A stretch of 64,000 nucleotides of DNA from Squalus acanthias (GCA_030390025.1 CM059430.1:74710001-74774000); one strand, 5' to 3'; counted from the stretch's first letter, positions 29,922-58,530 are shown. Numbers and translations are program-made. The notes: generated by a model not told the origin, from the sequence alone.

Positions 29922-29959
29922 TTTTATTTTTTGCTCTCTTGAAACCTCCCCCCCACTAA

Positions 29960-30916
29960 TTAGTTTAAAGCCCTCTCCACAGCCCTAGTTATTCGATTCG
30001 CCAGGACATTAGTCCCAGCACTGGCCAAGTGAAGTCCGTCCCAACGGAACAGCTCTCTCCTGCCCCAGTACTGGTGCCAGTGTCCCAAGAAGCAAAACCC
30101 ATTTTTCCCACACCAGTCTTTGAGCCACGCATTCAACTCCCTGATTTTATTTACCCTAGCCAAATTTGCTCGTGGCTCAGGTAGTAATCCAGAGATTATT
30201 ACCCTCGAGGTTCTGCTTTTTAATTTGGCCCCTAGCTGCTCAAACTCCCTCAGCAGAACCTCTTTCCTTGTTCTATCTATGTCATTGGTACCAACATGGA
30301 CCACGACAACTGGATCCTCCCCCTCCCACTCCAAGTTTCTCTCCAGCCCAGAGGAGATGTCCTTAACCCTGGCACCGGGCAGGCAACACAGCCTTCGGGA
30401 CTCTCGCTCTTGGCTGCAAAGAATCCTATCTATCCCCCTAATGATACTATCCCCTACCACTACAACATTTCTTTTTACTCCCCCCACTTGAATGGCCCCC
30501 TTTACCACGGTGCTGTGGCCAGGTTGCTCATCCTCCCTGCAGTCCCCGCTCCTATCCACACAGGGAGTAAGAGCCTCGAACCTGTTGGACAAGAGCAAGG
30601 GCTGCGGCTCCTCCAACACTACCTCCTGGATCCCTGTACCTGCCTCACTCGTAGTCACACCTTCCTGTCCCTGACCACGGGCTACTTCTGAAGTAGTTAC
30701 TCTAATTGGTGTGACTACCTCCTGAAACACGGAGTCCAGGTAACTCTCCCCCTCCCTGATGTGTCGCAGTGTTTGAAGCTCGGACTCCAGCTCATCAACA
30801 CGGAGCCGGAGTTCCTCGAGCAGCCAACACTTACTGCAAATGTGTTCACCGTGAACATCAATGGTGTCCACCAGCTCCCACATATTGCAGCAGTAACACA
30901 TCACCTGCTCTCCCAT
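29960..30916 (-). CDS. CR1 ORF1 protein: zinc finger/leucine zipper + SGNH esterase domain
   Basis: 318 aa open frame with CxxC...HxCxxC, coiled coil LEELRLRVDELESEL, and SGNH blocks GDS, PGA, GTND, DGLH. Confidence 0.95.
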   Translation of the reverse strand: MGEQVMCYCCNMWELVDTIDVHGEHICSKCWLLEELRLRVDELESELQTLRHIREGESYLDSVFQEVVTPIRVTTSEVARGQGQEGVTTSEAGTGIQEVVLEEPQPLLLSNRFEALTPCVDRSGDCREDEQPGHSTVVKGAIQVGGVKRNVVVVGDSIIRGIDRILCSQERESRRLCCLPGARVKDISSGLERNLEWEGEDPVVVVHVGTNDIDRTRKEVLLREFEQLGAKLKSRTSRVIISGLLPEPRANLARVNKIRELNAWLKDWCGKNGFCFLGHWHQYWGRRELFRWDGLHLASAGTNVLANRITRAVERALN

Positions 30917-34443: not shown

Positions 34444-36017
34444 TACGATAGCAAAATACTGCAAATGCTGGAAATCCGAAATAACAACTGAAAACGCTGG
34501 GAAAACGCAGCAGGCGAGGCAGCATCCTTGGAGAGAGAAACAGAGTTAACGTTTCAGGTCGATGACCTTTCGTCAGAACTGGAAAGAGCTGAAATCAAAT
34601 AGATTTAAGGCAAGGATGAGGCTGGGAAAAGGGGGAGGGGATGAAAGAACAAAAGGGGAGATTAAGAGACATTAAGAGACATTAAGAGATATGCAGGGCA
34701 AGAGGTGGTGTTAATGTTACAGGTTAAGCCTGAAAGAAGTGTGAAATCCACTGGCAGAATGAGGGACAGCTGCCAGCTTCTAGGAAGGAAAAAAAAAAGT
34801 GTGGGGGGCAAATAAAAGGGTGGATGAAAAAATAAAATATAAATGTGATAGGGGCTGAGATTATGTTCTAAAATTGTTGAACTCGATATTGACTCCAGAG
34901 GGCTGTAGCGTGCCTAAACGAAAGATGAGGTGCTGTTCCTCGAGCTTACACTTTGCTTCCGTGGAACAGTGTAATAGGCCGAGGACGGTGAGGTCAGAGT
35001 GGGAGTGAAGAGATGAATTGAAGTGACAGGCAACCGGGAGCTTGGGGTCCCCCTTACGGATTGAACGGAGGTGTTCCGCAAAGCGGTCACCCAATCTGCG
35101 TTTGGTCTCCCCAATGTAGAGGAGACCACATCGTGAGCAGCGAATACAGTATACTAAATTGCAGGAAGTACAAGTAAATCGCTGTTTCACCTGGAAGGGG
35201 TGTTTGGGGCCTTGGTCAGTGGGAAGAGGTGAGGTATAAGGGCATCAGTTGCATCTCCTGTGCTTGCACGGGAAGGTGTCGGGCGAAGGGGATGAGTTGC
35301 TGGGGGTGGTAGAGGAGTGGACTAGGGTGTCACGGAGGGAGCGGTCCCTGCGGAATGCTGAAAGGGGAGGTGAGGGGAAGATACGTTTGGTGGTGGGATC
35401 ACGCTGGAGGTGGCGGAAATGGCGGAGGATGATCGGTTGAATGTGGAGGCTGGTGGGGTGAAAGGTGAGGACAAGGGGAACTCTACCGTGGTTCCGGGAG
35501 GGAGGGGCAGGGGTGAGGGCAGTAGTGCGGGAGATAGAACGGACACGGTCGAGGGCCGTGTCGGAAACGGTAGAAGGGAATCCTCGGTTGAGGAAAAAGG
35601 AAGACATGTCGGAAGCAGTGGTATGGAAGGTGGCATGATCAGAGCAGATGCGGCGGAGATGGAGAAACTGGGAAAATGGAATAGAGTCCTTACAGGAGGC
35701 GGGTGGGAGGAAGTGTAGTCCAGGCTGCTGTGGGAATCAGTGGGCTTGTAGTGAATGTTAGTCAATAACCTATCCACAGAGATGGAGACGGAGAAGTCGA
35801 GGAAGGGAAGGGAAGAGTCGGAGATGGACCATGTGAAGGTGAGGGAAGGGTGGAAACTGGAAGCATAGTGAATGAAATGTTCTAGTTCAGGGCGAGAGCA
35901 GGAGACGGCACCGATACAGTCATCATTGTACCGGAAAAAGAGGTGATGCAGGGGACCCGAGTAGGACTGGAACAAATAGTGTTCCACATAACCCACGAAA
36001 AGGCAGGCATAGCTAGG
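34444..36017 (-). mobile_element. Penelope-like element (probably Neptune-type), 5'-truncated
   Basis: RT remnants PSYACLFVG and FFRYNDD, thumb, Cys-rich linker, GIY-YIG endonuclease LVYCIRCSRCGLLYIGETKRRLGDRFAEH; 3' pseudo-LTR at about 34450-34620. Confidence 0.93.
34544..34580 (-). ncRNA. Minimal type-I hammerhead ribozyme motif
   Basis: Minus strand: agtt CTGACGA a aggtc atc gacct GAAA cgtt aact. Core boxes, 5-bp stem II, palindromic ACGT in place of stem III, and stem I agtt/aact. Confidence 0.8.
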
Positions 36018-36290
36018 TTTTAATAATGAGATGAGGAGGAATTTCTTCACTCAGATGGTTGTGAATCTTGGGAATTCACTGCCCCAAAATTCCTACGGAT
36101 GCACATTCGTTGTGTATATTCAGAGCTGTAATAGATAGATGTTTGGACTCCAGCGGATTCAAGGGATATGGTGTTAGGGCAGGAAAGTGGAGTTGAGCTC
36201 GATGATCATCTCTGCTCTTATTGAATGGCGGAGCAGGCTTGAGGGTCCGTATGGCCTACTCCTGCTTCTAATTCGTATGTTCTTATATTC
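36018..36290 (+). mobile_element. CR1 copy I, 3' end
   Basis: EMRRNFFTQ segment, 3' UTR and ttcgtatgttcttatattctta tail. Confidence 0.88.
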
Positions 36291-36950
36291 TTAACTTGCT
36301 CCCTAGTTCCTTCAGAACTGTCTGTAGGACTTTGACACTTACCTTCCTATGTAATTGGTTCTCACATGGAATTCGAATTTTGGTATCTCCATTTCCCCCC
36401 GAAAAAGGTTCTGCATCTGTACAGTGATGTAATTTCCTCTAGCATCAGGAAGGCAACACATCAGGCCTGACACTTCGCATGTCCAGCCCTCTGCCTATCG
36501 AGCCCGCTAGGGTCACTGCATGCCTACACATCGCTGTGCACCCTTTGCAGTCATTTGTACCACGTTGCCATGGATGTGCACCAGATTGTAATTCCCCACG
36601 ATGTCTTCAACCTTACCGGCCTTCAGTAAAAAAAAAACGGATTGAGCGTGCCACACTCCAGGCGGATTCGTGCACATCCAGCATCTTCCTACCCAGCCGG
36701 ATGGCCACCCATTTATTATTCACCTGATCTCTATGTGGCTGCGGGGTGACCACCTCCTGGAAAGTGAGATCCAGGAAATTCTCAACCTCCCGTATGCCCA
36801 GCAGTGACTCCAGTCTCACCTCTATTTCAGAAAACCTGAGTTGGTGCTCGAGCAACCGGAGGCACTACCTGCACACATGCCATCCCGAAGTTTCCACTTG
36901 GCACAGCAATTGCAGAAAACGGGGCTTCTCTGTCCCATCATTTTAATTAA
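36290..36950 (-). mobile_element. CR1 ORF1 remnant (probable 5' part of copy H)
   Basis: ORF 36613-36855 LESLLGIREVENFLDLTFQEVVTPQ matches LQTLRHIREGESYLDSVFQEVVTP of the intact ORF1. Confidence 0.75.
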
Positions 36951-37063
36951 AGTCTATCTGCAAAAGGTACATAACGTTACACATATGTTTTAGTTTAGCA
37001 CCCCGTTAAATATCAATTATTTCGTTAATATTGATATGTAATTAAACTATATTTACATAAATG

Positions 37064-38692
37064 AGAAGTCGCACAACACCAGGTTATTGTCCAACAGTTT
37101 TATTTGAAATCACAAGCTTTCGGAGCTTACGTGGCCCCTTCCTCAGGTGAAGTGAACAAATACAGAATCGACAAAGCATATATAGATAGAGAACAATGCA
37201 TGTGTAACTTTCAATGGCAGACGACTACATTTAATTATCCTGACTGTTTATCTGCCGAGGTGTCACAAAAGGCAATCAGGTCAGCCAGGAAGGTACCACA
37301 TCAAAGACATAGCAAGATACAACTGAGACAATGAGGTGGAGTTACAGGGGGTCTAATGTGTCAAAAACTGCAGTCGGTATGTAAAACGATAAACTTTAAC
37401 ATTTTTACTTTTTTACTGGGAATCACATCTGTGAGTAAGCCAACGACGACTCGAGTCTGGAGCATGTCATGTATCGTGACATAAACCCAAGATCCCGGTT
37501 GAGGCCGTCCTCATGAGTGCGGAACTTGGCTATCAGTTTCTGCTCGATGATCTTGCGTTTGTCGTGTGTTTCTAAGGCCGCCTTGGAGAACGCTTTCCCG
37601 CTGATCCGAGGCTGAATGTCCTTGACTGCTGAAGTGTTCCCCGACTGGGAGGGAACACTCCTGCCTGGTGATTGTTGTGCGGTGTCCGTTCATACGTTGT
37701 CTCAGTGTCTGCATGGTCTCGCCGATGTACCATGCCGTGATGCATTCTTTCCTGCAACGTATGAGGTAGACAACGTTGGCCGAGTCACATGAGTATGTAC
37801 CATGTACCTGGCGGGTAGTGTCCTCACGTGTGATGATGGTATCTGTGTTGATGATCTGGCATGTCTTGCAGAGGTTGCCGTGGCAGGGTTGTGTGGTGTC
37901 GTGGTCGCTGTTATCCTGGAAGCTGGGTAATTTGCTGCGAACGATGGTACTTCTGAGGTAAGGCGGCTGTTTGAAGGCAAGTAGTGGAGGCGTGGGGATG
38001 GACTTAGCGAGGTGTTCGTCGTCATCGATGACATGTTGAAGGCTGCGAAGAACATGGCATAGTTTCTCCGCTCCGGGGAAGTACTGGACGACGTAGTGTA
38101 CCCTGTTGGTTGTGTCCCGTGTTTGTCTTCTGAGGAGGTCTATACGATTTTTTGCTGTGGCCCATCGGAACTGTCGATCGATGAGTCGAGCGTCATATCC
38201 CGTTCTTACGAGGGCGTTTTTCAGCGTCCGTAGGTGTCCATCGCCTTCCTCCTCGTCTGAGCGGATCCTGTGTATTCGCAGGGCTTGTCCATAGGGGATG
38301 GCTTCTTTAACGTGGTTAGGGTGGAAGCTGGAGAACTGGAGCATCGTGAGGTTGTCCGTGGGCTTGCGGTAGAGTGAAGTGCTGAGGAGTCCGTCTTTGA
38401 TGGAGATTCGTTTGTCCAGGAATTAAACCGATTCTGAGGAGTAGTCCATGGTGAGTTTGATGGTGGGATGGAACTTGTTTATGTTATCATGTAGTCTTTT
38501 CAGTGATCCTTCGCCATGGGTCCAAAGGAAGAAAATGTCATCGATGTATCTGATGTACAGTTGGTTGCAGGTCCTGTGCAGCGAAGAAGTCTTGCTCGAA
38601 CTTGTGCATGAAGATGTTGGCGTATTGGGGTGCGAATTTGGTCCCCATGGCTGTTCCGTGTGTTTGGGTAAAAAAATGGTTGTAGAAGGTGA
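37064..38692 (-). mobile_element. Penelope-like element (second family), 5'-truncated
   Basis: RT motifs GTAMGTKFAPQYANIFM and YIRYIDDIF; 277-aa ORF with thumb, CxxxxCxxC linker and GIY-YIG NVVYLIRC...WYIGETMQTLRQRMNGH. Confidence 0.95.
37110..37150 (-). ncRNA. Minimal type-I hammerhead ribozyme motif
   Basis: Minus strand: tcac CTGAGGA a ggggc cacgtaa gctcc GAAA gctt gtga. Stem I tcac/gtga, stem II with one G-U pair, palindromic AGCT. Confidence 0.8.
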
Positions 38693-38739
38693 TATATTTA
38701 CTTTGAAAGCGCTGCTCTCCCCTATTACTCTTTTGCACC

Positions 38740-39910
38740 GGTGTTTATCAAGCAAGAGGACATTGCGAAAGCTACGGTAAACGAAGCCTTGTTCAGAATA
38801 CTGCATGAGATAAAAATAGATAACGCGGTGGGACTAGAAAGGCTGCCAGAACTTAAAGTAAAAAAGTCACCAGGTCCCGATGGGATACATCCTCGGTTGC
38901 TGAGGGAAGTAAATGTAGAAATTGCGGAGCTGCTGACCACAAGCTTCCAATCCTTCATAGATACGGGGTGGTGCCAGACGACTGGAGAATTGTGAATATT
39001 ATACACTTGTTCAAAAAAGAGCTGAAAATATACCTTGCAATTACAGGCCTGTCAGTTTAACAGCAGTGGTGGGGAAGAACTTAGAATCAATAATCCGAGA
39101 GAAAGTTACCAGCCACGTGGACAAGTCTGCGGTCTCTCAACAGTCAACTTCCTCCAATAACTGTCCAATTAACCCGAATAAAGCAGCGCTAGCACGAATT
39201 TGTTAAGGGAAAATCGCCTTTGAATAACATGATTGAGTTTATTGAAAAGGTAACAGAGAGGGTGGATGAGGGCTGTGTAGTTGATTTTGTGTATATGGTC
39301 TTGGCAAAGGCCTCTGATAAAGTACGACATAATAATCTTGTCAGCAAAATTGAAGGTTATGGGATAAAAGGGGCAGTAGCAGCATGAATACAAAATCGAC
39401 TAAGAGATTGAAGACGAATTGTTTTAGTGAATGACTGTTATTTCGGACTGGGGGGAGGTATATAGTGCTGTTCCCGAGGTTTTAGTACCAGCACCACTGC
39501 TGTTTGTGAAGTACATTAATGTCTTGGATTTGGGTTACAATGCACTCTTCCGAAATTTTCAGATGTCACAAAGTTGGGAAGAGTATTAAACAGTGACGTA
39601 GTTCGTAATAGACTTCAAGAGGATATAGGCAGTTTGGTGGAATGGGCGAACATATGGCAGATGTAATTCAACGCAGAAAAGTGTTAGCTGACATATTTTG
39701 GTAGGAAGAATGAGGAGAGACAATACATGCAAAATGTACTATTTTGAAGTGTGCAAGAACAGAGAGACCTGGGGGTGCTTGTGCACAATTTTTTTAGGTG
39801 GCAAGACAGGTTAACAAAGCAGTTAAAAACAATGTCAAATACTGGGTTTATAAATGGATGCATAGAGTACAAAAGCCAGGACGTTATGCTAAGCATATAT
39901 AAAAAACGAA
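38740..39910 (+). mobile_element. Decayed CR1 ORF2 fragment
   Basis: KKSPGPDGIHPRLLREV, QRDLGVLVH, IEYKSQDVML. Confidence 0.88.
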
Positions 39911-40550: not shown

Positions 40551-40669
40551 TTACCTGCAAAGGAGGCTAGCCTTAAAATGTTCGGCAACAAGGAAAGATA
40601 GCAACAGAATTATTAAGAAACAAAATATCAACCTGGAAATCAAAGCAGCGCGAAGTCTGTAATCGGAAC
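40551..40669 (-). CDS. Transmembrane exon with intramembrane Arg and short tail: GSDYRLRAALISRLIFCFLIILLLSFLVAEHFKASLLCR*
   Basis: Acceptor ttttgcatattacag| at 40669/40670 (phase 1), hydrophobic run of about 22 aa. The end CAG|GTAAGG is both a phase-2 donor (exon end 40555) and an in-frame AGG TAA stop. Confidence 0.85.
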
Positions 40670-41599
40670 CTGTAATATGCAAAATTATGGACTTTGAGTT
40701 ATAAGGAGTGTTCTTCCGAAACATTACTCAATAAATGACGCAAATAAGGATGTGGCACAACTTAATACTTCCTTCCTACTTTGGGTATTTAATGAGATGT
40801 GAACAACTTTGTACTATGGGGAAATAAACATTTTAGTTGCAGGCTTGGAGCCATTTTAAAACGCATTATGCTTTCCTTTAAATGCTCAAATACTGAGGCA
40901 GGAAACACACGAACTTTATTCTACCTTGCCTGTTGGTTGTTTATAAATAGTTGATCGAGTGGAAAACTAGTCACAGGAATTAATCTGAAATTGGTTAAAG
41001 AGTTCGTAATATGCCATCGATCGATATACTACGTGCAGTAACAGGTTTGTTTAGTTCCAAAAGCGATTTCTTCTTTAAAGTTACGGCGTCTTAGCGCCCT
41101 ACTCAATATCTGCGAATGCGCTTTCTCTTGCAAAAACCGTACCATAGGCATTTCTTTTCTTTTCTCCGTGTTTCAATAAAAACAAAGAGGAATGTTGTTG
41201 CCTAACTATTTAGCTGTGGTGCTAAACTGTAACATTCCGATTTGACCTTTCCAGCATCGCACGCATCTCGAAAACAAATAAAACGATCTTAGTTTATCGC
41301 TAAAAATAAATCTTCTAATATCAAAAAACAATTAATTTTGTGCGAAAATATCGTCCAGTAATGAATTAGATTTCATCAAATAGTATGTAATATTAAAAAA
41401 AATATCATTTCAGAAATGTTTCAAAATTTGTTCGAGATCATAAGAATAAACAATAACGTTTCAGACAATAACTTTAAATGTGTTCTTATAACACGACGTG
41501 ACTCTGGGGAAAGTGTGGCATTTATCCCGAGGGATGTGTTTTTTTCCGGCAATTTGGTGCAACACAACGCACTCGCCCACTACCTGTATTCTACCAGTT

Positions 41600-44500
41600 T
41601 TGGAAATGTCCGTGCATGTTTTGCTCTTTTACCAGTGCTTCCCTTTTCTTTTTGTAGCATGGAGACCATAACTGTGAAACGTAGGTTAAGCGTGGCCTGC
41701 TCAGGGTCCTATACATGTTTAAATAACTTCATTACTTTTGAATTCTATACTCTAAGAAACAAATCTGTGCTTTGTTAGCATTTTAATTGTTTTTTCTGAC
41801 ATGCCATGCTGCTTCTAATGATTTGTTCTCCTGTATCCCTAGATCCTTTCGCTCTTCTACCCCATTCAATTAATGATTTTCCAACGTGTAGGTTAGGTTC
41901 CTGTTTTTCCAACCAAAGTGCATCATCTCACAATTATCTTACATTTTTTATGGTCAAGTTCATTCGCCACTTAACTGCAAGTTTTCTAATACCTTCTTGT
42001 ATTAGGTTGCATTCTTCCTGTGTTAGCTATACCTCCAAGTTTGGTATAATCTGGCAATTTTGATATTCAGTTAGTTATTCCTCAATCACAATCATTAGCG
42101 TAAATTATCAATATCATTAGCCCAAGGACTGATCCTTATAGAACACGGCTTTCTACCTTTCTCTAATCTGAATTACTACCCTTTACCCCATCTCTCGGCG
42201 TTCTATTTTTCAGTCAATTTGCTATCCATTCAGCTATTTTTCCTCTGGCTCCACATTCCCTAACGTTTGTCATGAATCTGCTGTGTGGTACGTTATCAAA
42301 CTTGTTTTTGAAAATCCAATATGTGACGTCTACTGCATTAACATTGTCTGCTCGTTTTATTCCTTCTTCAAAGAATGCTATCAGGTTAATTACCTTGCCT
42401 TAGACTTTTGGAATCCATGGTGTCTATTTTGTAGTTTATTATCTGTCTCTAAATGCGCTCTAGGATTGATTTTGTATAGATTCCAGTTCTTTTCCTATCA
42501 CTGACGTTAAGCTCACTGGTTTTGCACAACGATCGGTGCTGTGACGACTGTTGCTCACCATTTCTAAAAACGATTTGGACTCGGGAAGCAGAATTTCCAT
42601 TTCAAAATTTGCACATGACCTCAAATTGGGTGTGTACTTAATACGCAAGAGGACTGCGACAAAATACAGGAAGACATTAATTAACTTGCATAATGAGCGT
42701 GTAATTGGCAAATGAACTTCAACATAGATAAGTGCGAGGTAATAGACTTTTGCAGGAAGAATAAATGGGCCACATACTTCTTTGCAAATAAGTGTCTAAA
42801 TAGGGTGAAGCAGCAGAGGGATCTGGGGGTACAGATAGACAGATGACTAAAAGTAGCGAAGCAGGTTAATAAAGCCATATAAAAAGCAATCAATGCACTG
42901 GGGGTCATTTATAGAGGGATAGAATTGAAAAGCAGGTCAGTTATTTTAAATGTGTACAGAACCACACTTGGAGCACTGTGAACAATTCAGCTCTCCATAT
43001 TATAAAGAGCATATTGAGGCACTGGAGAAGGCACAAAGATATTTACGGGAATGATATCGCAACTGAGAGGTTATACCTATCAGGAAAGATTGAACAGGCT
43101 TGGGCCCCTTTCTCTGGAAAAGAGAAGACTGAGGGCTGACCTGATGGAGGTCATCAAGATTATGACAGAGTTTTATAGGGTATACGTAGAGGCGCTATTT
43201 CTTCTTTCAGGCGAGACCAGAACTAGTTGCCATAAATATAAGATAGCCACTGATCAATTGCAAAAGCAATTCAGGAGAAAGTTCTTAACCCAGAGAGTGG
43301 TGAGAATGTGGTACTCGCTACCAGAGAGAATTGTTGAGACGAATACAATAGAAGCATTCAATTAATGCTCGGTAAGCATTTGAGGGAGATAGGATAAGAA
43401 GGATATGTTGATGGTGTTAGATGAAGAGGTGTGGGGGGAGGCTTTTCTGGAGCATAAATACTCGCCAGAACCTGTTAGGCCGAATGGCTTGTTTCTGCGC
43501 TGTAAATAATTTGCAATTTTTTTAAAGTAGTGCGTCTGCTATCTCCTCTCTAAATTCCTTGAGGATGCGTGGTTGCATAGCCTCCGTATCTGCGGTTTTA
43601 TCATCTTTCAGTTTTCCTAGTTATTCAATTATTTTCTCCCTTTCTGTCCCAACTTTATTAATATTCTTGTTAACTCATCCTCTAGTGAATTGTCTATTTC
43701 GTTATCTTCTTCAGTAACAACTGAGGCGAAGTAATTATTCAATAGTTCTGCCATTTCTCTGTCATTACCCGTGTGTTAATCTTGCTCAATCTTTAGTGGC
43801 CCTATCCCAACTTGAAATTTAAATTTGTTGTTTGTATGTCTGTAGAACATTTTGTTATTACTGTTTATATTCCTTTATAATTTGATTTGGTAATTTATCT
43901 TGGTGTTCTTGCTGTTGTATTAACTTCTCTCCTCCTTATAGGGTTTTGACCTCCCCACCCCTATTAAGTACCCAATACTTCTTATCTGTCGTTTTCTTTA
44001 AGATTCACTGTTCGGGGCCTTACGGCAAATTATTGCCTCCAGTTCATCCAACATGTTTCAAGTACTACATACATTGCTATGCTAACAGTGTAACTTATTA
44101 TTTATCTCTCCTTGTTTTGATTATTTATTTTCTGTTTAAAGTTGATGACTTCATCCGATCTCTGGCCATTCGTGTTATCTTTATTCCTTCCTTTAGTTTG
44201 TCCTTTAATATATTTCCCTTATTCTTTTATTGTTAGTTTTCTGTAATTTCAAGCAGTTCCTTCCTCCCTTGTTATGTGTGTAAAGTATTATTTACAGCCC
44301 ATTTATCCTTTCCGATCCGACGTTGACCTGCTCGGTTGAGCTGCAAACCAGTCCAACGGTACAACTCCTTCCTGTCCCAGTACTGGTGCCAGTAACCCAC
44401 TTGCAAACACAAATCTTTTAGCCACGTGTTGACTTTCCTAATCTATTCTTCCCCGTGCCAATTTGCACGTGGTTCGGCAATAATCCAGATATTATCACCC

Positions 44501-45600
44501 TTGATGTCTTGCTTTTCAATCTTTCCTATATCATTGGTTCCGACATAGATTACAACAACTGGATCCCACCCCTCACTTTCCAAATTTTTTCCAGCCGTTT
44601 TCAGATGTCCCTTATCCTTGATCCTAACTGCGAAGTATACTATCTACCACTAATTATTAAAACCCTGCAACTATAACCATTCTACTCTACTTCTCCTCAA
44701 CTTGGACAGCCTTCAGCTCCACATTGTGTTGGTCGACATTTTAGTTGTCCTTCCCACAGTCTCACTTACTATCCTCACATGTATCGTGTAAGTTATACCT
44801 GTTGGGCAGCAGCACTGTCTGCTGGGTCTCCTACATCACCTCGCCAACGTTCCCATTACCCGGCAGACAGACAGTCACACTCTCCCCTTACTGCACCTGT
44901 GCTAGTCGTTGTTGTGTGAATTTGCTCTGAAGTAAATTATCCAATTATTCATCCTCGACCTCCTCCTTATTTGTCTCGAGGCAGCGACCTTTCTTGGAGA
45001 TGTCGCAGTCTGGGACAGTGTCGATGTCCGCAAACACCCTCATACTACAATCCCGGTACACAGCCTGCACTGCCATATCATTATTAATTAATTCATTGAT
45101 TTATTTGTTGGTTATACGTAGTTTATTTCTTTAAGTTTTTGGTCAATTGAAGTCTAGATTTATTAAATAGGTGGAGTTCGCTTATGTTAAATAAAACAAT
45201 ATTTTTAACGTGATTAATTACGTAGTTATTCATCAGTTATTAGCGTCTTTAAGTGCAGTTAGAATGTAATCACTGAACCCCTTTGATTTCAACTTTCTTT
45301 CAATAATATTACATTCTTACTAAGTCAAGTTTAACACAAACCAGGAAAGATAATAAACACACAAAGTGATATCTAGATACTTTCCGATATACTTATTTTA
45401 ATTTCTTCGAGTTCTGCTGCTTTCTTTGTGTGTTGATTATGACATCGCGTTTTCTATTTCCAATGTTGCGATTATTTACTTATTTACTGTTGCCCCTTGG
45501 TTTAAAGCACTTCGCACCTCTTTCCCCCTCTGAAACGAATTCACCCTCTCGACAAATTCCCGTTGCTGCTCTGTTTAGCAAGCCACTCTCTTCAGCATAT
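41600..45600 (-). mobile_element. Heavily decayed CR1 in the C1-TM intron, interrupted by a plus-strand CR1
   Basis: RT remnants 41600-42510, ORF2/ORF1 remnants 43520-45080 (cccagtactggtgccag as in ORF1 of other copies), AT-rich 5' region beyond. Confidence 0.75.
42560..43505 (+). mobile_element. 5'-truncated CR1 3' fragment
   Basis: ORF 43051-43365 YQERLNRLG...LEKRRLRADL...FLTQRVVRMW and a 3' UTR. Confidence 0.88.
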
Positions 45601-45808
45601 ACCCCCAGCACTGTTCGTATATATTAGTTAAGTACAACAACTTCCCATCGGCAGCCAAACTGGACTATACGAGACCAGGGCATCTCGGACAGCAAATTAC
45701 TGAATTCCACGTTTAACTTCGCATGTACGGTCCCCGGAATTTGGTGGCCGATTTCCACGTAAATAACGGTGAGCGCTCTTAATAAAGACTTACTCCTTGG
45801 CATCTTAC

Positions 45809-46118
45809 CTGGGTTACAATTGGAGAACAAATAAACAGCTAATTTCGGTGTCTGATGGGTGGGGTGAGATACCAAACAATTGTGATGGGTCCCTTTCTGG
45901 TCTGGCTGTGTCTGTTGCTGAATACTTGACGCTTCATATAGTCTTGCTGAGTTCAGCTGCCTTGTGGTTGTTATCCCGGTTGCAACGTTGCTTTTATTTT
46001 TGTACCAGCTGATGGCGATCGTCTCCGGATAAAAGTCAACCGTTTCACAAACGAGGAGGATAATTGTTTAAATTTCCGCCAGGCGTTATGGAGACAATCG
46101 TCGGGTTTGCTGGCGGAG
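45809..46118 (-). pseudogene. Ig C1-set domain exon with +1 frameshift
   Basis: Acceptor tcccctctgtag|, donor CCAG|gtaaga. Length 310 nt = 3n+1. Reads APPANPTIVSITPGGNL / TIILLVCETVDFYPETIAISWYKN...LYEASS...CLVSHPT...SNCNP with CxxxxFYP, W and CxVxH C1 hallmarks. The uncorrected frame stops at TGA 46047-46045. Confidence 0.92.
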
Positions 46119-46269
46119 CTACAGAGGGGATCAGGGAAAATCATATATACGTTCAGCATTTTACATTTATAACATTTTTATATCCCAATTCCAAATAAAG
46201 TGAGATAATTCATAAGTTGCATTTAACTGAATTGAAAAAAAAATGTACTTGACGGCCACCCTATACTTT

Positions 46270-46670
46270 CCCAAATGCTCAAGAAACAGCGGCAATAATG
46301 GAGCGGTTCTTCACAGCTATCACAAAAGTCTCACATACAGTGAATAATTTTCAAATGCAATCATCTCTGCGATGTGGGTAAATGATGCTTCAACCAGCAA
46401 ATTCAAACAATGACAGTGAGATTAATGACCAGTTCATTGTTTAAAGTGATATTGATTAGCGGAGGAATGGTGGGCAGAACACTTGGGGAACTGCTTGTTT
46501 TCGTTCCAGCAATGCTGTGGGTATTTTAACTTCATAAAGAACAGCAGGCAGGACATGGTTGGATTGTGACCTGAAATACAGCAGGTCCAACAGAGCAGTA
46601 ATCCCTCTCTACTGAAGTAAACAGCCCAGATTAATTGTTTAAATCCTACATAATAGCTTGACTCCAGAGT
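46270..46670 (-). mobile_element. Old tRNA-derived SINE (Deu-domain / SacSINE1-like)
   Basis: Recognised by resemblance to shark DeuSINE core sequence (aatgaccag...gggcagaacacttggggaact...gctgtgggtattttaac); similar decayed copy at about 55110-55315. Not verified by alignment. Confidence 0.5.
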
Positions 46671-46679
46671 CTTTTACGA

Positions 46680-47000
46680 ACGTACGAATATGCGAGACAT
46701 GACGGATAGATAAAGACCTTCTGGCTCACACACCGCACCAGACGGCAGCCTGTTCCAGAGTTCCACTATTCTCTGGAAAAAAAAGAGCCACCTCCTTGCA
46801 TCTAACCCAGATCAAGCGTGATACAACTTAGATTTGTTAGCCCTGGTCCAACCTAACCTATTTAATTAAAACAAACTGTCAACTGGAACAAAATGTGTTC
46901 CCTTCAATATCTTAAAATCCTCAAGCAGATCACCTGTATGTTTACGCTTCTCTAAAGTTTAGCGTCCAAACTCTTTTAACCTTTCTTCATCACCTTCATA
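46680..47000 (-). mobile_element. Decayed CR1 3' fragment
   Basis: gttccagagttccactattctctggaaaaaaa and cagatcacc resemble the FFxxRVVxLWN and RGDL 3' segments. Confidence 0.55.
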
Positions 47001-48335
47001 GCTTTAGGGGAAGACCGGCGTAAACTCCAGAGAAACGGGTAAAAACGACTGTTTTTGCCGTTTCATCAGGGTATCCGCAGATATTTAGTGCTGAAGGTAT
47101 GACGGAGAACACTGCATAATTTCTCCCCACAATTATTCAGAGAAAAACAGCTCGGATCTCCGCCAAGATAACATCATTAGCTGGATATGTGATTCACGCA
47201 GAAATGTATTCACTGTATAATCTGAGGAATTAAATACCCTCTCAGAGGATACTCCAGCAACTTTTTTTCTGCAAATTATCTCCTTCCAACTCACTGTTCG
47301 TTACCAACAGCGGTATGTGCCAATAACAAATTCAATTTACAGCTCATGCCATGGCCACTGCTTTTCATTAAAAAATGTTAAAGAAAAGTAGTCGCTTTAA
47401 TCTATAATCTATAATTAATTTAGCTGATTTAATTAATAATCTGTAATATTCATTAAAATAATTAGGAATATGAACAGCTATCGGAATTTTGGAGCGGCTT
47501 CAGTGGGGATAGAAACTTCAAACATCAGTGAATACACATCAATCCTAATGATTTCTTGTGAAGCTCTCAGCGACATATTGAGGATCCACAAGGTGCAGTT
47601 CAATCGATCTTATAATAATAAAGTCTTTATGCAGCAATTGCTGAAAATCGTAGTTTGTATCAGGTCCGGGATATGTTTAAACGTATTTCTCATTAATCTT
47701 TGAGAGATTGCGAGTTGCGTTGCTTTATTCACGGGACTGAGATGTGCCGTTTACTAAGAATCCTTAAATTACACGCGTCGTTTGGGGAATTTTCTATTAA
47801 CTACTTACACTGGAGAACGGCTGGAACTCATTTAACGATAACAGAATTTTTTGGGACCTGTTTGACATTACTGCTTCCTATCAGTATTAGAATTGTATTA
47901 GATCTCTATACTCGATTATTAAACGATCAAACTTTCAGCCATTAGGATCGCCAAAATGTACCGAATATGACATTTCTAAGAAACACATCATTACAAACGT
48001 ATTGCCAATCAGAGCGGATTCAGATAATTTGAGTCGAAACGTTATTAACCCATTTTCAAATTATTTCTGAATCTGCCTAACTTCGTCAGAGCTTCAATAA
48101 CAGAATACATTTTTAAAAAATATAAATATTGCTCTTCCAATTTATGATTACATCGTGTACGTTGAAAGCATTTCATTTAGAATTGTATCGTATATATTGA
48201 GGATTAATATACAGGTGACGAAACGCAAACGATCCACGAGAACAGGCATATAAGGCACCAATCATTCTGCATTACTTATTATTTTTTTCAGTTAAATGAA
48301 TTATCTGTGAGAGAAATCCCTGCAATGCCACCTAC

Positions 48336-48653
48336 CGTGGACAACAATCGTTGATCCAGTTCCGTTTCTGATTGTGTTTCTCTGTTGTTTGACTCCGCAG
48401 TAATACACCCCAGCGTCCTGGAAAAGGACATCAACGATCTGCAAGAAGCCCCGTCCTTTCCTCAAGAAATGTTGTTTCCTCGAGTCTGAGCTGGGTTGCA
48501 GAAATATACTTTCGCCGAGATTCCACCAGATAACATTCACTTCTGAAGTATCTGGAAAAGGAGGGAACGAACAAGCGAAGGTAATGTTTGCACCGATCGT
48601 CACAATCTTGTGTTGGGGGCTTTGGGACACTTTGAACACGGCATCGCCAAAAA
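48336..48653 (-). CDS. Germline-joined VJ-type Ig V-set domain exon (106 codons)
   Basis: Acceptor tttttcttccacag|, donor CACG|gtaggt, phase 1-1, open frame. VSQSP, B-strand Cys (ITFAC), C-strand Trp, DAGVYYC, and J-like GTGSTIVV in the same exon. Confidence 0.95.
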
Positions 48654-48774
48654 CTGTGGAAGAAAAATAAAAACATACAGACATCAATTAAACATATCAA
48701 TCCTGCCGGGAAATTGGTGATAGGCAGAGATATATAGAAGGATAGGAATGGACACAAAGAAGGATAAAAAATAC

Positions 48775-48829
48775 TTGTGTAGATAATCCCCAGGATCGCG
48801 GTGCACTGATGCACAGCGCGCACAGACAT
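48775..48829 (-). CDS. Leader (signal peptide) exon MSVRAVHQCTAILGIIYT
   Basis: ATG at 48829, 55 nt (18 codons + 1), donor A|gtattt, 121-nt intron to the V exon, in frame giving ...ILGIIYTIFGDA-VFKVSQSP. Confidence 0.85.
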
Positions 48830-48859
48830 ATTGAACAAAGGAAATAACTATTTTCCGCC

Positions 48860-48980
48860 ATAAACAGGAAACTCTGATGCTTTTATATAGATATGTTTGC
48901 AACTAAACTGCTATAAACGATGAAGCAATGACGAGTGAAACCACACGTTGAAATCAGCCGTACAATCAAGGAAATGAAGA
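48860..48980 (-). promoter_or_regulatory. Putative promoter: TATA box with RUNX, ETS and half-CRE motifs
   Basis: TATATAAAAG at 48889-48880 (minus strand), 51 nt above the ATG; TGTGGTT at 48945-48939; AGGAA cores at about 48866 and 48969; TGACG at 48929-48933. Confidence 0.6.
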
Positions 48981-58243: not shown

Positions 58244-58530
58244 NNNNNNNNNNNNNNNNNNNNNNNNNNNNNNNNNNNNNNNNNNNNNNNNNNNNNNNNN
58301 NNNNNNNNNNNNNNNNNNNNNNNNNNNNNNNNNNNNNNNNNNNNNNNNNNNNNNNNNNNNNNNNNNNNNNNNNNNNNNNNNNNNNNNNNNNNNNNNNNNN
58401 NNNNNNNNNNNNNNNNNNNNNNNNNNNNNNNNNNNNNNNNNNNNNNNNNNNNNNNNNNNNNNNNNNNNNNNNNNNNNNNNNNNNNNNNNNNNNNNNNNNN
58501 NNNNNNNNNNNNNNNNNNNNNNNNNNNNNN
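58244..58530. other. Assembly gap (287 N)
   Basis: Run of N. Confidence 1.

What the first reader, a model, noticed from the sequence alone, without database searches (positions are those of the whole stretch)
40551..48890. Germline-joined, RSS-less leader-VJ-C1-TM gene built like a T-cell receptor chain
Seen: four phase-1 exons encoding a signal peptide, a V domain with its J-like G strand (GTGSTIVV) already fused, a true C1-set domain (CETVDFYP...W...CLVSH), a spare Cys just before the membrane (SNCNP), a TM with Arg and a roughly 10-aa tail. No heptamer-nonamer splits the V exon. Only the V exon is obvious in the ORF track. Established: C1-set domains are largely confined to Ig, TCR, MHC, tapasin, B7 and SIRP-type proteins, and non-rearranging VJ-C1 genes are the architecture proposed for the pre-RAG ancestor of antigen receptors (compare NKp30/NCR3, SIRP and PRARP-type genes). 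Inference: this belongs to a poorly characterised cartilaginous-fish family of innate, TCR-like activating receptors, possibly disulfide-linked dimers.
Basis: partly seen in the sequence, partly recalled or inferred. Interest (0 to 1): 0.9.

Follow-up and report, generated by a model that had tools for sequence, protein, structure and literature searches.

The report
Shark VJ-C1 activating receptor, frameshifted
This is a non-rearranging immune-receptor gene of a shark, built like one chain of a T-cell receptor and belonging to a large, unnamed family of paired activating and inhibitory receptors, but the copy in this window has a two-base deletion that breaks its constant-domain exon.

Summary
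The four minus-strand exons are real. They are the leader (48829-48775), a VJ-type V exon (48653-48336), a C1-set exon (46118-45809) and a TM/tail exon (40669-40551). All have AG/GT borders in phase 1, and each is supported by homology.

The finding left out one fact: the C1 exon is 310 nt and frameshifted. Contigs from two DNA samples carry exactly this broken exon. One contig in each sample also carries a version two bases longer, which reads open. I cannot tell whether that version is an allele or a paralogue more than 90% identical.

The gene belongs to a family found throughout cartilaginous fishes: leader-VJ-C1-TM. Most members have ITIM tails, and a minority have an Arg-bearing TM and a short tail. 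Public annotation gives the family at least seven conflicting automatic names.

The window's V and C1 exons sit inside a conserved ITIM-bearing orthologue clade. Its TM exon is the activating type. That is a classic paired-receptor chimera.

The membrane-proximal Cys is not conserved, so the dimer idea is unsupported. RNA evidence is one 240-nt V-exon contig.

I found no paper describing the family, but the key shark NCR3 papers were not readable. First-stage notes of this scan report similar VJ-C1 genes nearby on the same piece.

The parts
48775..48829 (-). Leader exon. It has an ATG plus 18 codons and one further base, with a phase-1 donor CAA|GTATTT.
   Evidence: Read. The first six residues equal those of the Heptranchias relative P0156 (11 of 18 identical). 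tblastn with P0073 hits 48829-48773.
48336..48653 (-). V exon, 318 nt, phase 1 to phase 1. It holds the last leader residues, a V-set domain and a fused J-like G strand (NGTGSTIVV). There is no RSS.
   Evidence: Pfam V-set 32.6 bits. 73% identical to the Pristiophorus protein P0203. Sits in a 10-row clade with 99/97 support. RSS scan negative. W42, C27, D79, G81, Y83, C85, G97, G99 and V104 are the family's conserved columns.
45809..46118 (-). C1-set exon, 310 nt. It is frameshifted by a two-base deficit located near 46055/46056.
   Evidence: Pfam C1-set 39.9 bits on the 86 codons after the shift. Length and frames. The identical 342-nt contig is present in X1 and X5, and a +2 variant is present in one contig of each. 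Sits in a 10-row clade with 100/99 support.
40551..40669 (-). TM/tail exon with acceptor ATTACAG|. It encodes 39 codons (GSDYRLRAALISRLIFCFLIILLLSFLVAEHFKASLLCR) and then TAA. The stop overlaps a consensus donor, CAG|GTAAGG.
   Evidence: Read. 41-48% identical to the TM/tail of five activating-type shark proteins, which end 2-18 residues after the [DE]H motif. It is one of only two phase-1 hydrophobic candidates in the 15.8 kb downstream of C1.
46119..48335 (-). Intron between the V and C1 exons (2217 nt). It holds a very high-copy repeat at about 46710-47042.
   Evidence: Summed contig depth is 24,246 in X1 at 46710-46820, against about 17-45 in most of the other bins.
40670..45808 (-). Intron between the C1 and TM exons (5139 nt). 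It is filled with retroelement fragments.
   Evidence: Reverse-transcriptase-tail ORFs on the + strand at 42978-43365. tblastn finds no inhibitory TM or ITIM exon here.

Best explanation
The locus is an activating-type member of a multigene family of germline-joined (non-rearranging) leader-VJ-C1-TM receptors found throughout cartilaginous fishes.

The family is a paired-receptor system. Most members end in ITIM-bearing tails. A minority carry a TM helix with an Arg near its outer end, an acidic residue plus His at its inner end, and a tail of a few residues.

The gene in the window combines two origins. Its ectodomain (V and C1) comes from a conserved ITIM-bearing orthologue lineage, and its TM exon is the activating type.

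By analogy with NKp30, SIRP-beta, activating KIR and TCR chains (inference, not tested), an intact product would do two things. It would bind the same or a similar ligand as its inhibitory counterpart through the V domain. It would signal through an ITAM adaptor held by the TM Arg.

The copy in the window cannot make that protein, because a two-base deletion shifts the frame in the C1 exon. It is either a null allele that segregates with an in-frame allele, or a young pseudogene lying beside an in-frame paralogue. Skipping the C1 exon would still give an in-frame V-TM product.
For: Exon anatomy and phases.

Domain calls.

Family:
- 219 representatives match the V exon at E<=1e-3.
- 58 of 71 scanned sequences also carry C1-set; one of the 71 is the window's own V exon.
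- All 16 V-C1 representatives whose names I looked up come from sharks, rays or chimaeras.
- The best 32 of 41 profile hits are all chondrichthyan, at 181 bits or more. The next hit scores 69 bits.

Paired design:
- Crude census: 42 of 97 have a TM plus an ITIM-like motif, and 12 of 97 have a basic TM plus a short tail.
- The window's TM exon is 41-48% identical to the TM of P0171, P0163, P0170, P0173 and P0006.

Chimeric origin:
- The V and C1 trees both place the window's exons in the same 10-row clade as nine proteins of 311-337 aa with ITIM-like motifs, P0199 excepted. Support is 99/97 and 100/99.
- An AU test rejects grouping the C1 exon with the main activating clade (p = 2e-69).

Frameshift is real:
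- The 342-nt contigs X1 record 1 and X5 record 26 match 45797-46138 with 0 differences.
- A two-base insertion behind 46055 is seen in one contig of each sample. It makes a 312-nt open exon.

C1 skipping: two annotated isoform pairs differ by exactly the 94-residue C1 exon.
Against: - No transcript joins the exons. The only RNA-type evidence is one 240-nt contig lying wholly inside the V exon, in a run that is only guessed to be RNA (X12 record 24, depth 3.11). No RNA contig lies on the C1 exon. The TM exon was outside the stretch I laid.
- The window's copy is broken. Its C1 F strand has His where most of the family has the Tyr of the YxC motif, although the main activating clade also lacks that Tyr.
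- Adaptor pairing and ligand sharing are pure analogy.
- The ITIM and activating census is a crude motif and hydrophobicity count. It misfiles four R...DH-type proteins under ITIM: P0061, P0073, P0194 and P0196.
- Because I laid contigs at 90% likeness, the in-frame version may come from a neighbouring paralogue and not from this locus.
Confidence: 0.72

Rival explanations
1. The locus is simply a dead pseudogene. It would be a decaying duplicate of the neighbouring inhibitory VJ-C1 gene that sits upstream of an unrelated relic TM exon, and no product is made.
For: - The C1 exon is frameshifted and the same broken form is present in two samples.
- Four of the six V-exon differences from the other runs are amino-acid changes, and all four move the window away from the family consensus: N44, F69, V73 and L76.
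- Tyr is replaced by His in the C1 F strand.
- A 5.1-kb repeat-filled intron precedes the TM exon.
- No junction-spanning RNA was found.
Against: - All four exons are otherwise open, with intact splice sites and the family's conserved residues.
- The end branches are not unusually long: V 0.16 against a median of 0.22, and C1 0.29 against a median of 0.27.
- The 267-codon length of the in-frame model matches activating homologues of 265-271 aa.
- A V-exon contig is present in a run guessed to be RNA, and it carries the window-type residues at four of the six variable sites.
Confidence: 0.3
2. The gene is a member of the shark NCR3 (NKp30) family that has already been described in nurse shark. 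The V-C1 form would then be a known primordial feature.
For: - It has a J-like strand of the GxG type and an Arg at the outer end of the TM. That these are NKp30 traits is recalled knowledge.
- Nurse shark has eight NCR3 genes, MT914154-914161 (passage seen in PMC12227049).
- First-stage notes list many NKp30-like genes in this genome.
- Two annotated family genes have V-only isoforms.
Against: - No NKp30 chain is among the best 60 PDB sequences for the V exon, which are mostly PD-L1 and PD-1, with contactins, CEA/CEACAM1, CD276, LRIG1, ROBO1 and pIgR.
- No Ginglymostoma NCR3 protein appeared among the 41 hits of the family profile. That search scores only the candidates that share the most words.
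- The scan's notes place single-V NKp30-like genes in the MHC class III region on another piece of the genome (unchecked).
Confidence: 0.15
3. The family is the cartilaginous-fish orthologue of SIRP (VJ-C1-C1, ITIM tails, paired with a basic-TM form), with one C1 domain lost.
For: - NCBI's pipeline most often names the members as tyrosine-protein phosphatase non-receptor type substrate 1-like.
- The design is the same: a VJ domain, a C1 domain, several tyrosine motifs, and an activating partner.
- A SIRP-alpha-named cluster is among the structural neighbours in the Atlas, with TM 0.75.
Against: - The window has only one C1 exon, and the family proteins I read have a single C1 domain.
- No SIRP chain is among the best 60 PDB sequences for either the V or the C1 exon.
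- Six other automatic names are given to equally close members, so the name is not evidence.
Confidence: 0.1
4. It is a germline-joined immunoglobulin light-chain or TCR gene, or a relic of one.
For: - The best PDB matches of the C1 piece are a lambda constant domain (E = 5.8e-12) and UrIg2 (E = 5e-9).
- Foldseek's best 50 matches of the family model are antibody light chains.
- NCBI names several members Ig lambda-1 light chain-like.
Against: - There is no RSS.
- It has its own TM exon and belongs to a family with ITIM tails.
- Ig light-chain-like proteins score 69 bits or less against the family profile, while members score 181 bits or more.
- Identity to light chains is 22-27%.
Confidence: 0.03

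Closest known systems
SIRP family (SIRP-alpha and SIRP-beta) of tetrapods
   Same: A non-rearranging V domain with a J-like strand is followed by a C1-set domain. Inhibitory members have several tyrosine motifs. Activating members have a basic TM residue and a short tail. The family shows paired-receptor evolution. It is also the most frequent automatic name for these proteins.
   Different: This family has one C1 domain and not two. The basic TM residue is Arg at the outer end, plus [DE]H at the inner end. No SIRP chain is among the best 60 PDB sequence matches. Orthology was not tested.
NKp30 / NCR3, including the nurse-shark NCR3 family (Kinlein et al. 2021; only the citation was seen)
   Same: A germline VJ-type V domain, an Arg at the outer end of the TM and a short tail. 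The family has V-only isoforms that would look like NKp30.
   Different: A C1-set exon is present. NKp30 is not among the best 60 PDB matches of the V exon. Linkage to the MHC is not shown for this piece of the genome.
TCR chains
   Same: The order leader-V(J)-C1-short connecting piece-TM with a basic residue-very short tail is the same. A Cys sits just before the membrane in this one gene.
   Different: There is no RSS or rearrangement. The Cys is not conserved in the family. Most family members are ITIM receptors.
UrIg and UrIg2 of elasmobranchs (PMC12227049: abstract, section 7 and passages read)
   Same: A non-rearranging VJ exon with a split leader is followed by C1-type domains. The C1 piece matches UrIg2 chain 9dmx_A at E = 5e-9, the third-best PDB sequence.
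   Different: UrIg2 has nine to eleven C domains, and UrIg is described as an antibody-like gene. This family has one C1 domain, TM exons of two signalling types and many paralogues.
B7 family (PD-L1, B7-H3/CD276, B7-H6)
   Same: A V-C ectodomain. PD-L1 gives the best single-domain sequence matches to the V exon (E about 1e-6 to 1e-5). B7-H6 is a top rigid-body structural match (Z 15.9, 190 residues aligned).
   Different: The family has a conserved GxG J-like strand (G97 and G99 in at least 90% of 71 rows) and ITIM or Arg-TM signalling ends. The structural rows all lie within about one Z unit of each other, so the ranking does not discriminate.

Membership tests
Chondrichthyan VJ-C1-TM paired-receptor family (unnamed; NCBI models carry at least seven automatic names) | V-set domain with a fused J-like strand (NGTGS-x-L/I-x-V) | tested here: met
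   Pfam V-set 32.6 bits. G97, G99 and V104 are conserved in at least 90% of 71 rows and are present in the window. 73% identity to P0203.
Chondrichthyan VJ-C1-TM paired-receptor family (unnamed; NCBI models carry at least seven automatic names) | One C1-set domain after the V domain (C-x-T-x-x-FYP, W, LYE-x-SS, C-x-VSH) | tested here: met
   C1-set 39.9 bits. 64-66% identity to P0202, P0203 and P0200. The exon is, however, frameshifted in the window.
Chondrichthyan VJ-C1-TM paired-receptor family (unnamed; NCBI models carry at least seven automatic names) | Placement inside the family in trees of both domains | tested here: met
   A 10-row clade with support 99/97 (V) and 100/99 (C1). The trees hold family members only: three light-chain-like outgroups were dropped because blastp at E<=1e-3 did not find them.
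Chondrichthyan VJ-C1-TM paired-receptor family (unnamed; NCBI models carry at least seven automatic names) | TM/tail of one of the two signalling types | tested here: met
   The activating type: Arg, then 16-18 residues, then [DE]H, then a short tail. 41-48% identity to five shark proteins.
SIRP | Two membrane-proximal C1-set domains | tested here: not met
   Only one C1 exon is found in the window by tblastn. Family proteins have a single C1 domain.
SIRP | Sequence grouping with SIRP V and C1 domains | tested here: inconclusive
   No SIRP chain is among the best 60 PDB sequences. No curated SIRP set was available for a tree.
SIRP | Binding of CD47; association of the activating form with DAP12 | not testable with these tools
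   These need experiments.
NKp30 / NCR3 | A single VJ-type Ig domain with no C domain | tested here: not met
   A C1-set exon lies between the V and TM exons. V-only isoforms do exist in two annotated family genes.
NKp30 / NCR3 | Arg in the TM and a short tail | tested here: met
   Translation of the TM exon. That this is a trait of NKp30 is recalled knowledge.
NKp30 / NCR3 | MHC linkage and orthology to nurse-shark NCR3 (MT914154-914161) | not testable with these tools
   Only the window is readable.
Rearranging Ig/TCR | RSS (heptamer-spacer-nonamer) at the 3' end of V, and separate J segments | tested here: not met
   No RSS in 48200-48800. V and the J-like strand lie in one open exon that ends in a splice donor.
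UrIg / UrIg2 | A VJ exon followed by several C1-type domains | tested here: not met
   There is one C1 exon only. The C1 piece does match UrIg2 at E = 5e-9. The V relationship was not tested.

The most novel reading that the evidence does not exclude
This family would be a surviving, non-rearranging descendant of the pre-RAG antigen-receptor ancestor. Its form is VJ-C1-TM, and its activating members have a basic TM residue and a very short tail and pair with ITAM adaptors as TCR chains do. It has been kept across sharks, rays and chimaeras as a germline-encoded paired-receptor system. The activating TM exon has been joined to different inhibitory ectodomain lineages several times: this window, P0005, P0073, and the P0006 clade.
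Probability: 0.12. Interest if true: 0.85.

Novelty: new member of a known kind. Interest (0 to 1): 0.5.

Why it matters
[quoted passage not shown] Two such shark genes, UrIg and UrIg2, were recent, prominent findings (PMC12227049, PMC10751288).

This is a whole multigene family with the membrane-bound, TCR-chain-like form. It is present in all three chondrichthyan lineages and is hidden under conflicting automatic names.

The family gives the field testable material on three questions:
- Do these receptors pair with CD3-zeta, FcR-gamma or DAP12 homologues?
- What do they bind?
- Where do their V and C1 domains fall relative to Ig, TCR, SIRP, NCR3 and UrIg?

The locus itself shows paired-receptor dynamics at work. 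An inhibitory-lineage ectodomain is joined to an activating TM exon, and a broken and an open version of the C1 exon coexist in two individuals. This is the pattern known from activating KIR and Ly49 genes in mammals.

Tried and rejected
- A word-indexed search with the V-exon ORF found nothing. The ORF is 128 aa, so full-length relatives of about 265-340 aa fall outside the tool's length window. This says nothing about novelty.
- A profile of V-only fragments against the PDB was swamped by multi-Ig proteins such as titin, Robo and contactins. It could not rank NKp30 or SIRP.
- Fold searches with the AlphaFold model of P0006 (pLDDT 86.9) did not discriminate. Foldseek gave only antibody light chains. 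VIA-align gave Rst, B7-H6, Neph1, butyrophilins, PD-L2, MHC II and Fabs, all within about one Z unit.
- The Atlas look-ups gave generic V-C1 neighbours.
- I considered whether the sequence just after the C1 donor is a relic of the inhibitory TM. Only P0202 showed a weak 25-residue match, and P0200 did not, so I rejected the idea.
- I looked for inhibitory TM or ITIM exons in the window with five ITIM-lineage proteins (four of them with a TM and ITIM tail) and found none.
- No paralogue lies in the window.
- I could not settle allele against paralogue for the in-frame version.
- Seven literature searches found no description of this V-C1 family.
- The papers most likely to bear on it were not held: Flajnik 2012, Ohta and Flajnik 2015, Kinlein 2021 and Flajnik 2023.
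- Supplements are closed. Supplementary Note XI of the elephant-shark genome paper and table S1 and fig. S1 of the UrIg2 paper may list such genes.
Every search used single exons or stored proteins. The spliced model is given only as coordinates and lengths.

Full report
**What is in the sequence**

On the minus strand I find four exons with canonical AG/GT borders. Each is split after the first base of a codon.

| Exon | Coordinates | Length | Notes |
|---|---|---|---|
| Leader | 48829-48775 | 55 nt | starts at ATG |
| V | 48653-48336 | 318 nt | fused J-like strand |
| C1 | 46118-45809 | 310 nt | frameshifted |
| TM/tail | 40669-40551 | 119 nt | stop at 40553-40551 |

- The three split codons read Ile, Ala and Gly.
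- The V exon scores 32.6 bits on Pfam V-set (cut-off 26).
- The part of the C1 exon after the shift scores 39.9 bits on Pfam C1-set (cut-off 21).
- The V exon runs without interruption from the end of the leader through the J-like strand NGTGSTIVV to the splice donor.
- The 48200-48800 stretch has no exact heptamer on either strand. It also has no heptamer (one mismatch or fewer) with a 12/23 spacer and a nonamer (three mismatches or fewer).
- Only the V exon is visible as a long ORF.

**What the finding left out**

The C1 exon is 310 nt, so it cannot be an open phase-1 exon.
- Its first 16 codons (PPANPTIVSITPGGNL) are in one frame.
- The other 86 codons (TIILLVCETVDFYP ... SNCNP) are in another frame.
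- Stops lie in both frames near 46070-46046.

A first-stage note on the same window had already flagged this (s1-888666). I confirm it.

**Is the frameshift real?**

I laid Logan contigs of two DNA runs and two runs guessed to be RNA on 45600-48900, at 90% likeness. The DNA runs are X1 (sample S1, study P1) and X5 (sample S2, study P2). The RNA-guess runs are X12 and X10.

- A 342-nt contig in X1 (record 1) and one in X5 (record 26) match 45797-46138 with 0 differences and 0 gaps. The broken exon is therefore in the reads of two samples and is not an assembly slip.
- One further contig in each sample has two letters put in behind 46055. Depth is 11.9 of 28.4 in X1 and 24.9 of 61.1 in X5.
- With those two letters the exon is 312 nt and reads as one open frame of 103 codons.
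- By eye, the 31 residues around the site then agree with the Pristiophorus relative P0203 at 25 positions. The window's form is therefore the derived one, a two-base deletion.
- A second version, 5-8% divergent, is also seen along the introns (X1 records 3 and 5; X5 records 27, 28, 30 and 31).

I cannot tell whether that version is the other haplotype of this locus or a paralogue more than 90% identical.
- The depths of the two versions are similar: about 12 against 15-16 in X1.
- Contigs seen in a single version have 16-21.
- These figures fit either reading.
- First-stage notes, which I have not checked, report further VJ-C1 genes on the same piece. They lie about 30 kb before the window, 20 kb beyond its end, 270 kb before and 879 kb beyond.

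**V-exon variation and RNA**

In X1 and X5 the V-exon contigs differ from the window at six and four sites. Of the six sites, four change the protein (N44K, F69S, V73L, L76R) and two are silent. All four changes move towards the family consensus.

X12 holds one 240-nt contig (record 24, depth 3.11) lying wholly inside the V exon.
- It has the window's letters at four of the six sites and the other letters at two.
- It reaches no junction.
- No RNA-type contig lies on the C1 exon.
- X10 shows only the repeat at about 46731-46982.

Expression is therefore hinted at, not shown. The TM exon lay outside the stretch I could lay, given the limit of 6,000 letters and one call.

**The family**

An exhaustive HMMER search with the V exon found 219 representatives at E<=1e-3, 73 at E<=1e-10 and 2 at E<=1e-30.

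- Of 71 sequences I aligned (the window's V exon plus 70 hits of up to 493 aa), 70 match V-set and 58 match C1-set.
- The proteins read leader-V with NGTGS-x-L-x-V, then C1 with FYP ... WYKNG ... LYE-x-SS ... YTC-x-VSH, then a TM and tail.
- I looked up names for 20 representatives. The 16 that are V-C1 proteins all come from cartilaginous fishes: Mustelus, two Scyliorhinus species, Heterodontus, Carcharodon, Heptranchias, Chiloscyllium, two Mobula species, Hemitrygon and Callorhinchus.
- The other four are multi-V proteins, three from reptiles and one from Heterodontus.
- A profile search gave 41 proteins at E<=1e-5 among 8,000 scored candidates. The best 32 (181-405 bits) are all chondrichthyan, and the next scores 69 bits.
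- The automatic names conflict: Ig lambda-1 light chain-like, CD276 homolog, tapasin-related-like, NCR3 ligand 1-like, SIRP-alpha (PTPNS1)-like, two MHC class II beta-like labels, and uncharacterized.

**Two signalling types**

I made a crude count over the 97 stored proteins that have V followed by C1.

| Class | Count of 97 |
|---|---|
| TM plus at least one ITIM-like motif | 42 |
| Basic residue at the TM plus a short tail | 12 |
| TM fitting neither class | 21 |
| No TM (many partial models or isoforms) | 22 |

Four proteins of the R...DH type (P0061, P0073, P0194, P0196) are misfiled under ITIM by this count.

The window's TM exon encodes GSDYRLRAALISRLIFCFLIILLLSFLVAEHFKASLLCR followed by a stop.
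- It is 41-48% identical to the TM and tail of P0171 (Mustelus), P0163 (Cetorhinus), P0170 and P0173 (Scyliorhinus) and P0006 (Carcharodon).
- It shares with them the Arg near the outer end and [DE]H at the inner end. Those proteins end 2-18 residues after that motif.
- In the 15.8 kb downstream of the C1 exon, only two AG-preceded phase-1 ORFs have a TM-like hydrophobic run. The other one, at 39447, has no homologue.
- With the in-frame C1 version the coding exons sum to 801 nt, or 267 codons. Activating homologues have 265-271 aa.
- The stop overlaps a consensus donor, so a further exon cannot be excluded.

**A chimeric, paired-receptor origin**

- The closest relatives of the V exon are P0203 (Pristiophorus, 73%), P0200 (Heterodontus, 71%) and P0202 (Heptranchias, 67%). 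For the C1 piece they are 64-66% identical.
- Maximum-likelihood trees of 36 rows place both exons in the same 10-row clade. Support is 99/97 for V and 100/99 for C1.
- Apart from the window's exon, all members of that clade are proteins of 311-337 aa carrying ITIM-like motifs, P0199 excepted. The branching roughly follows shark orders.
- The window's V exon is sister to Pristiophorus with weak support (86/60). This suggests a squalomorph shark (inference).
- An AU test rejects putting the window's C1 with the main activating clade (p = 2e-69).
- The three light-chain-like outgroups I intended to include were dropped, because blastp at E<=1e-3 did not find them. The trees are therefore midpoint-rooted and hold family members only.

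The window's gene thus has the ectodomain of an inhibitory lineage and the TM exon of the activating type. The same pattern appears elsewhere in the V tree: P0005, which has an activating TM, sits with the ITIM proteins P0156 and P0008, and P0073 sits with P0076.

tblastn with five proteins of the ITIM-bearing lineage, four of them with a TM and ITIM tail, found no inhibitory TM or ITIM exon in the window.

**How it most likely works**

Shown here: the architecture, the family and the two tail types.

Inferred from what is established for NKp30, SIRP-beta, activating KIR and TCR chains:
- An intact product would sit in the membrane with its Arg paired to an acidic residue of an ITAM adaptor.
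- It would bind, through the V domain, a ligand shared with or close to that of the inhibitory counterpart.

The window's copy cannot make V-C1-TM. If the C1 exon were skipped, V (phase 1) to TM (phase 1) would stay in frame. Annotated isoform pairs in two species differ by exactly the 94-residue C1 exon. P0164 and P0117 are identical at 288 of 288 aligned residues, and P0081 and P0079 at 246 of 248. That route is possible but untested for this gene.

**The dimer idea**

The Cys in SNCNP replaces a Ser or another residue in the orthologues (for example the stretch before the TM in P0200, P0202 and P0203). It is also absent from the activating clade. Disulfide-linked dimers are therefore not a family feature.

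**Comparison with what is known**

- By sequence, the C1 piece is nearest to a lambda constant domain (E = 5.8e-12), UrIg2 (9dmx, E = 5e-9), MHC class II beta and IgNAR C1.
- The V exon is nearest to contactin-1 (summed over several Ig domains), PD-L1 and PD-1.
- No NKp30 or SIRP chain is among the best 60 in either list.
- The AlphaFold model of P0006 (pLDDT 86.9, pTM 0.70) matches antibody light chains in Foldseek at 22-27% identity.
- In VIA-align it matches a tie of Rst, B7-H6, Neph1, butyrophilins and PD-L2 (Z 15-16). These results do not discriminate.
- By design the family is closest to SIRP, but it has one C1 domain. Its V-only isoforms resemble NKp30. Its activating form has the layout of a TCR chain.

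**Literature**

Seven full-text searches found no paper describing this V-C1 family.

What I read:
- The abstract, section 7 and passages of the UrIg2 paper (PMC12227049).
- Passages of the cartilaginous-fish MHC paper (PMC10751288).
- Passages of the elephant-shark genome paper (PMC3964593).
- Passages of the CD28-family paper (PMC11599192).

These papers treat NCR3, UrIg and UrIg2 as the shark non-rearranging VJ genes.

The shark NCR3 paper (Kinlein et al. 2021), Flajnik et al. 2012, Ohta and Flajnik 2015 and Flajnik et al. 2023 were not held. Supplements are closed. My statement that the family is undescribed is limited by that.

**Verdict**

The gene is a member of a real family found across cartilaginous fishes and poorly named in annotation. 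That family is a paired, mostly inhibitory receptor family, and this copy is a broken activating-type member.
- I rate it a new member of a known kind (paired IgSF receptors with VJ and C1 domains) and of moderate interest.
- The family as a whole is worth more attention than this single locus.

Noticed in passing
window 26969-30916 (-): An apparently intact non-LTR retrotransposon. It has an 832-aa ORF with endonuclease and reverse-transcriptase features (26969-29467), preceded by ORFs of 156 aa and 318 aa. Many truncated copies of its tail (the motif ...LYSLEFRRMRGDLIE...) lie across the window, including inside the C1-TM intron.
   Followed up: no
window 46710-47042: A very high-copy short repeat in the V-C1 intron. 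Summed contig depth is 24,246 in X1 and 13,195 in X5, against about 17-45 in most other X1 bins. It is also the only part of the stretch, apart from the V exon, that is present in the runs guessed to be RNA.
   Followed up: partly
window 35245-38806 (-): ORFs of 242, 277 and 127 aa that look like fragments of another retroelement. The 277-aa ORF ends in a Cys/His-rich stretch followed by a GIY-YIG-like stretch, which recalls Penelope-like elements (recalled; not tested).
   Followed up: no
window 58244-58530: An N run of 287 bases.
   Followed up: no
window 48520 and 48601; also 47985: At these places all runs that cover them differ from the window (X1, X5 and X12 at the first two; X1 and X5 at 47985). 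The first change is N44K, which moves to the family's consensus WWK. They are either private variants of the assembled individual or assembly errors.
   Followed up: partly
relatives P0005, P0073, P0061, P0006 clade (stored proteins): The activating R...[DE]H TM exon is attached to at least four different ectodomain lineages in different sharks. In Chiloscyllium P0168 the Arg is Gln. This looks like repeated exon shuffling or gene conversion inside the family.
   Followed up: partly
P0203 N-terminus; P0005 residues 51-187: Two public gene models of the family begin with retrotransposon-derived sequence. It matches the LINE copies of this window in tblastn, so these are likely annotation artefacts in those genomes.
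   Followed up: no
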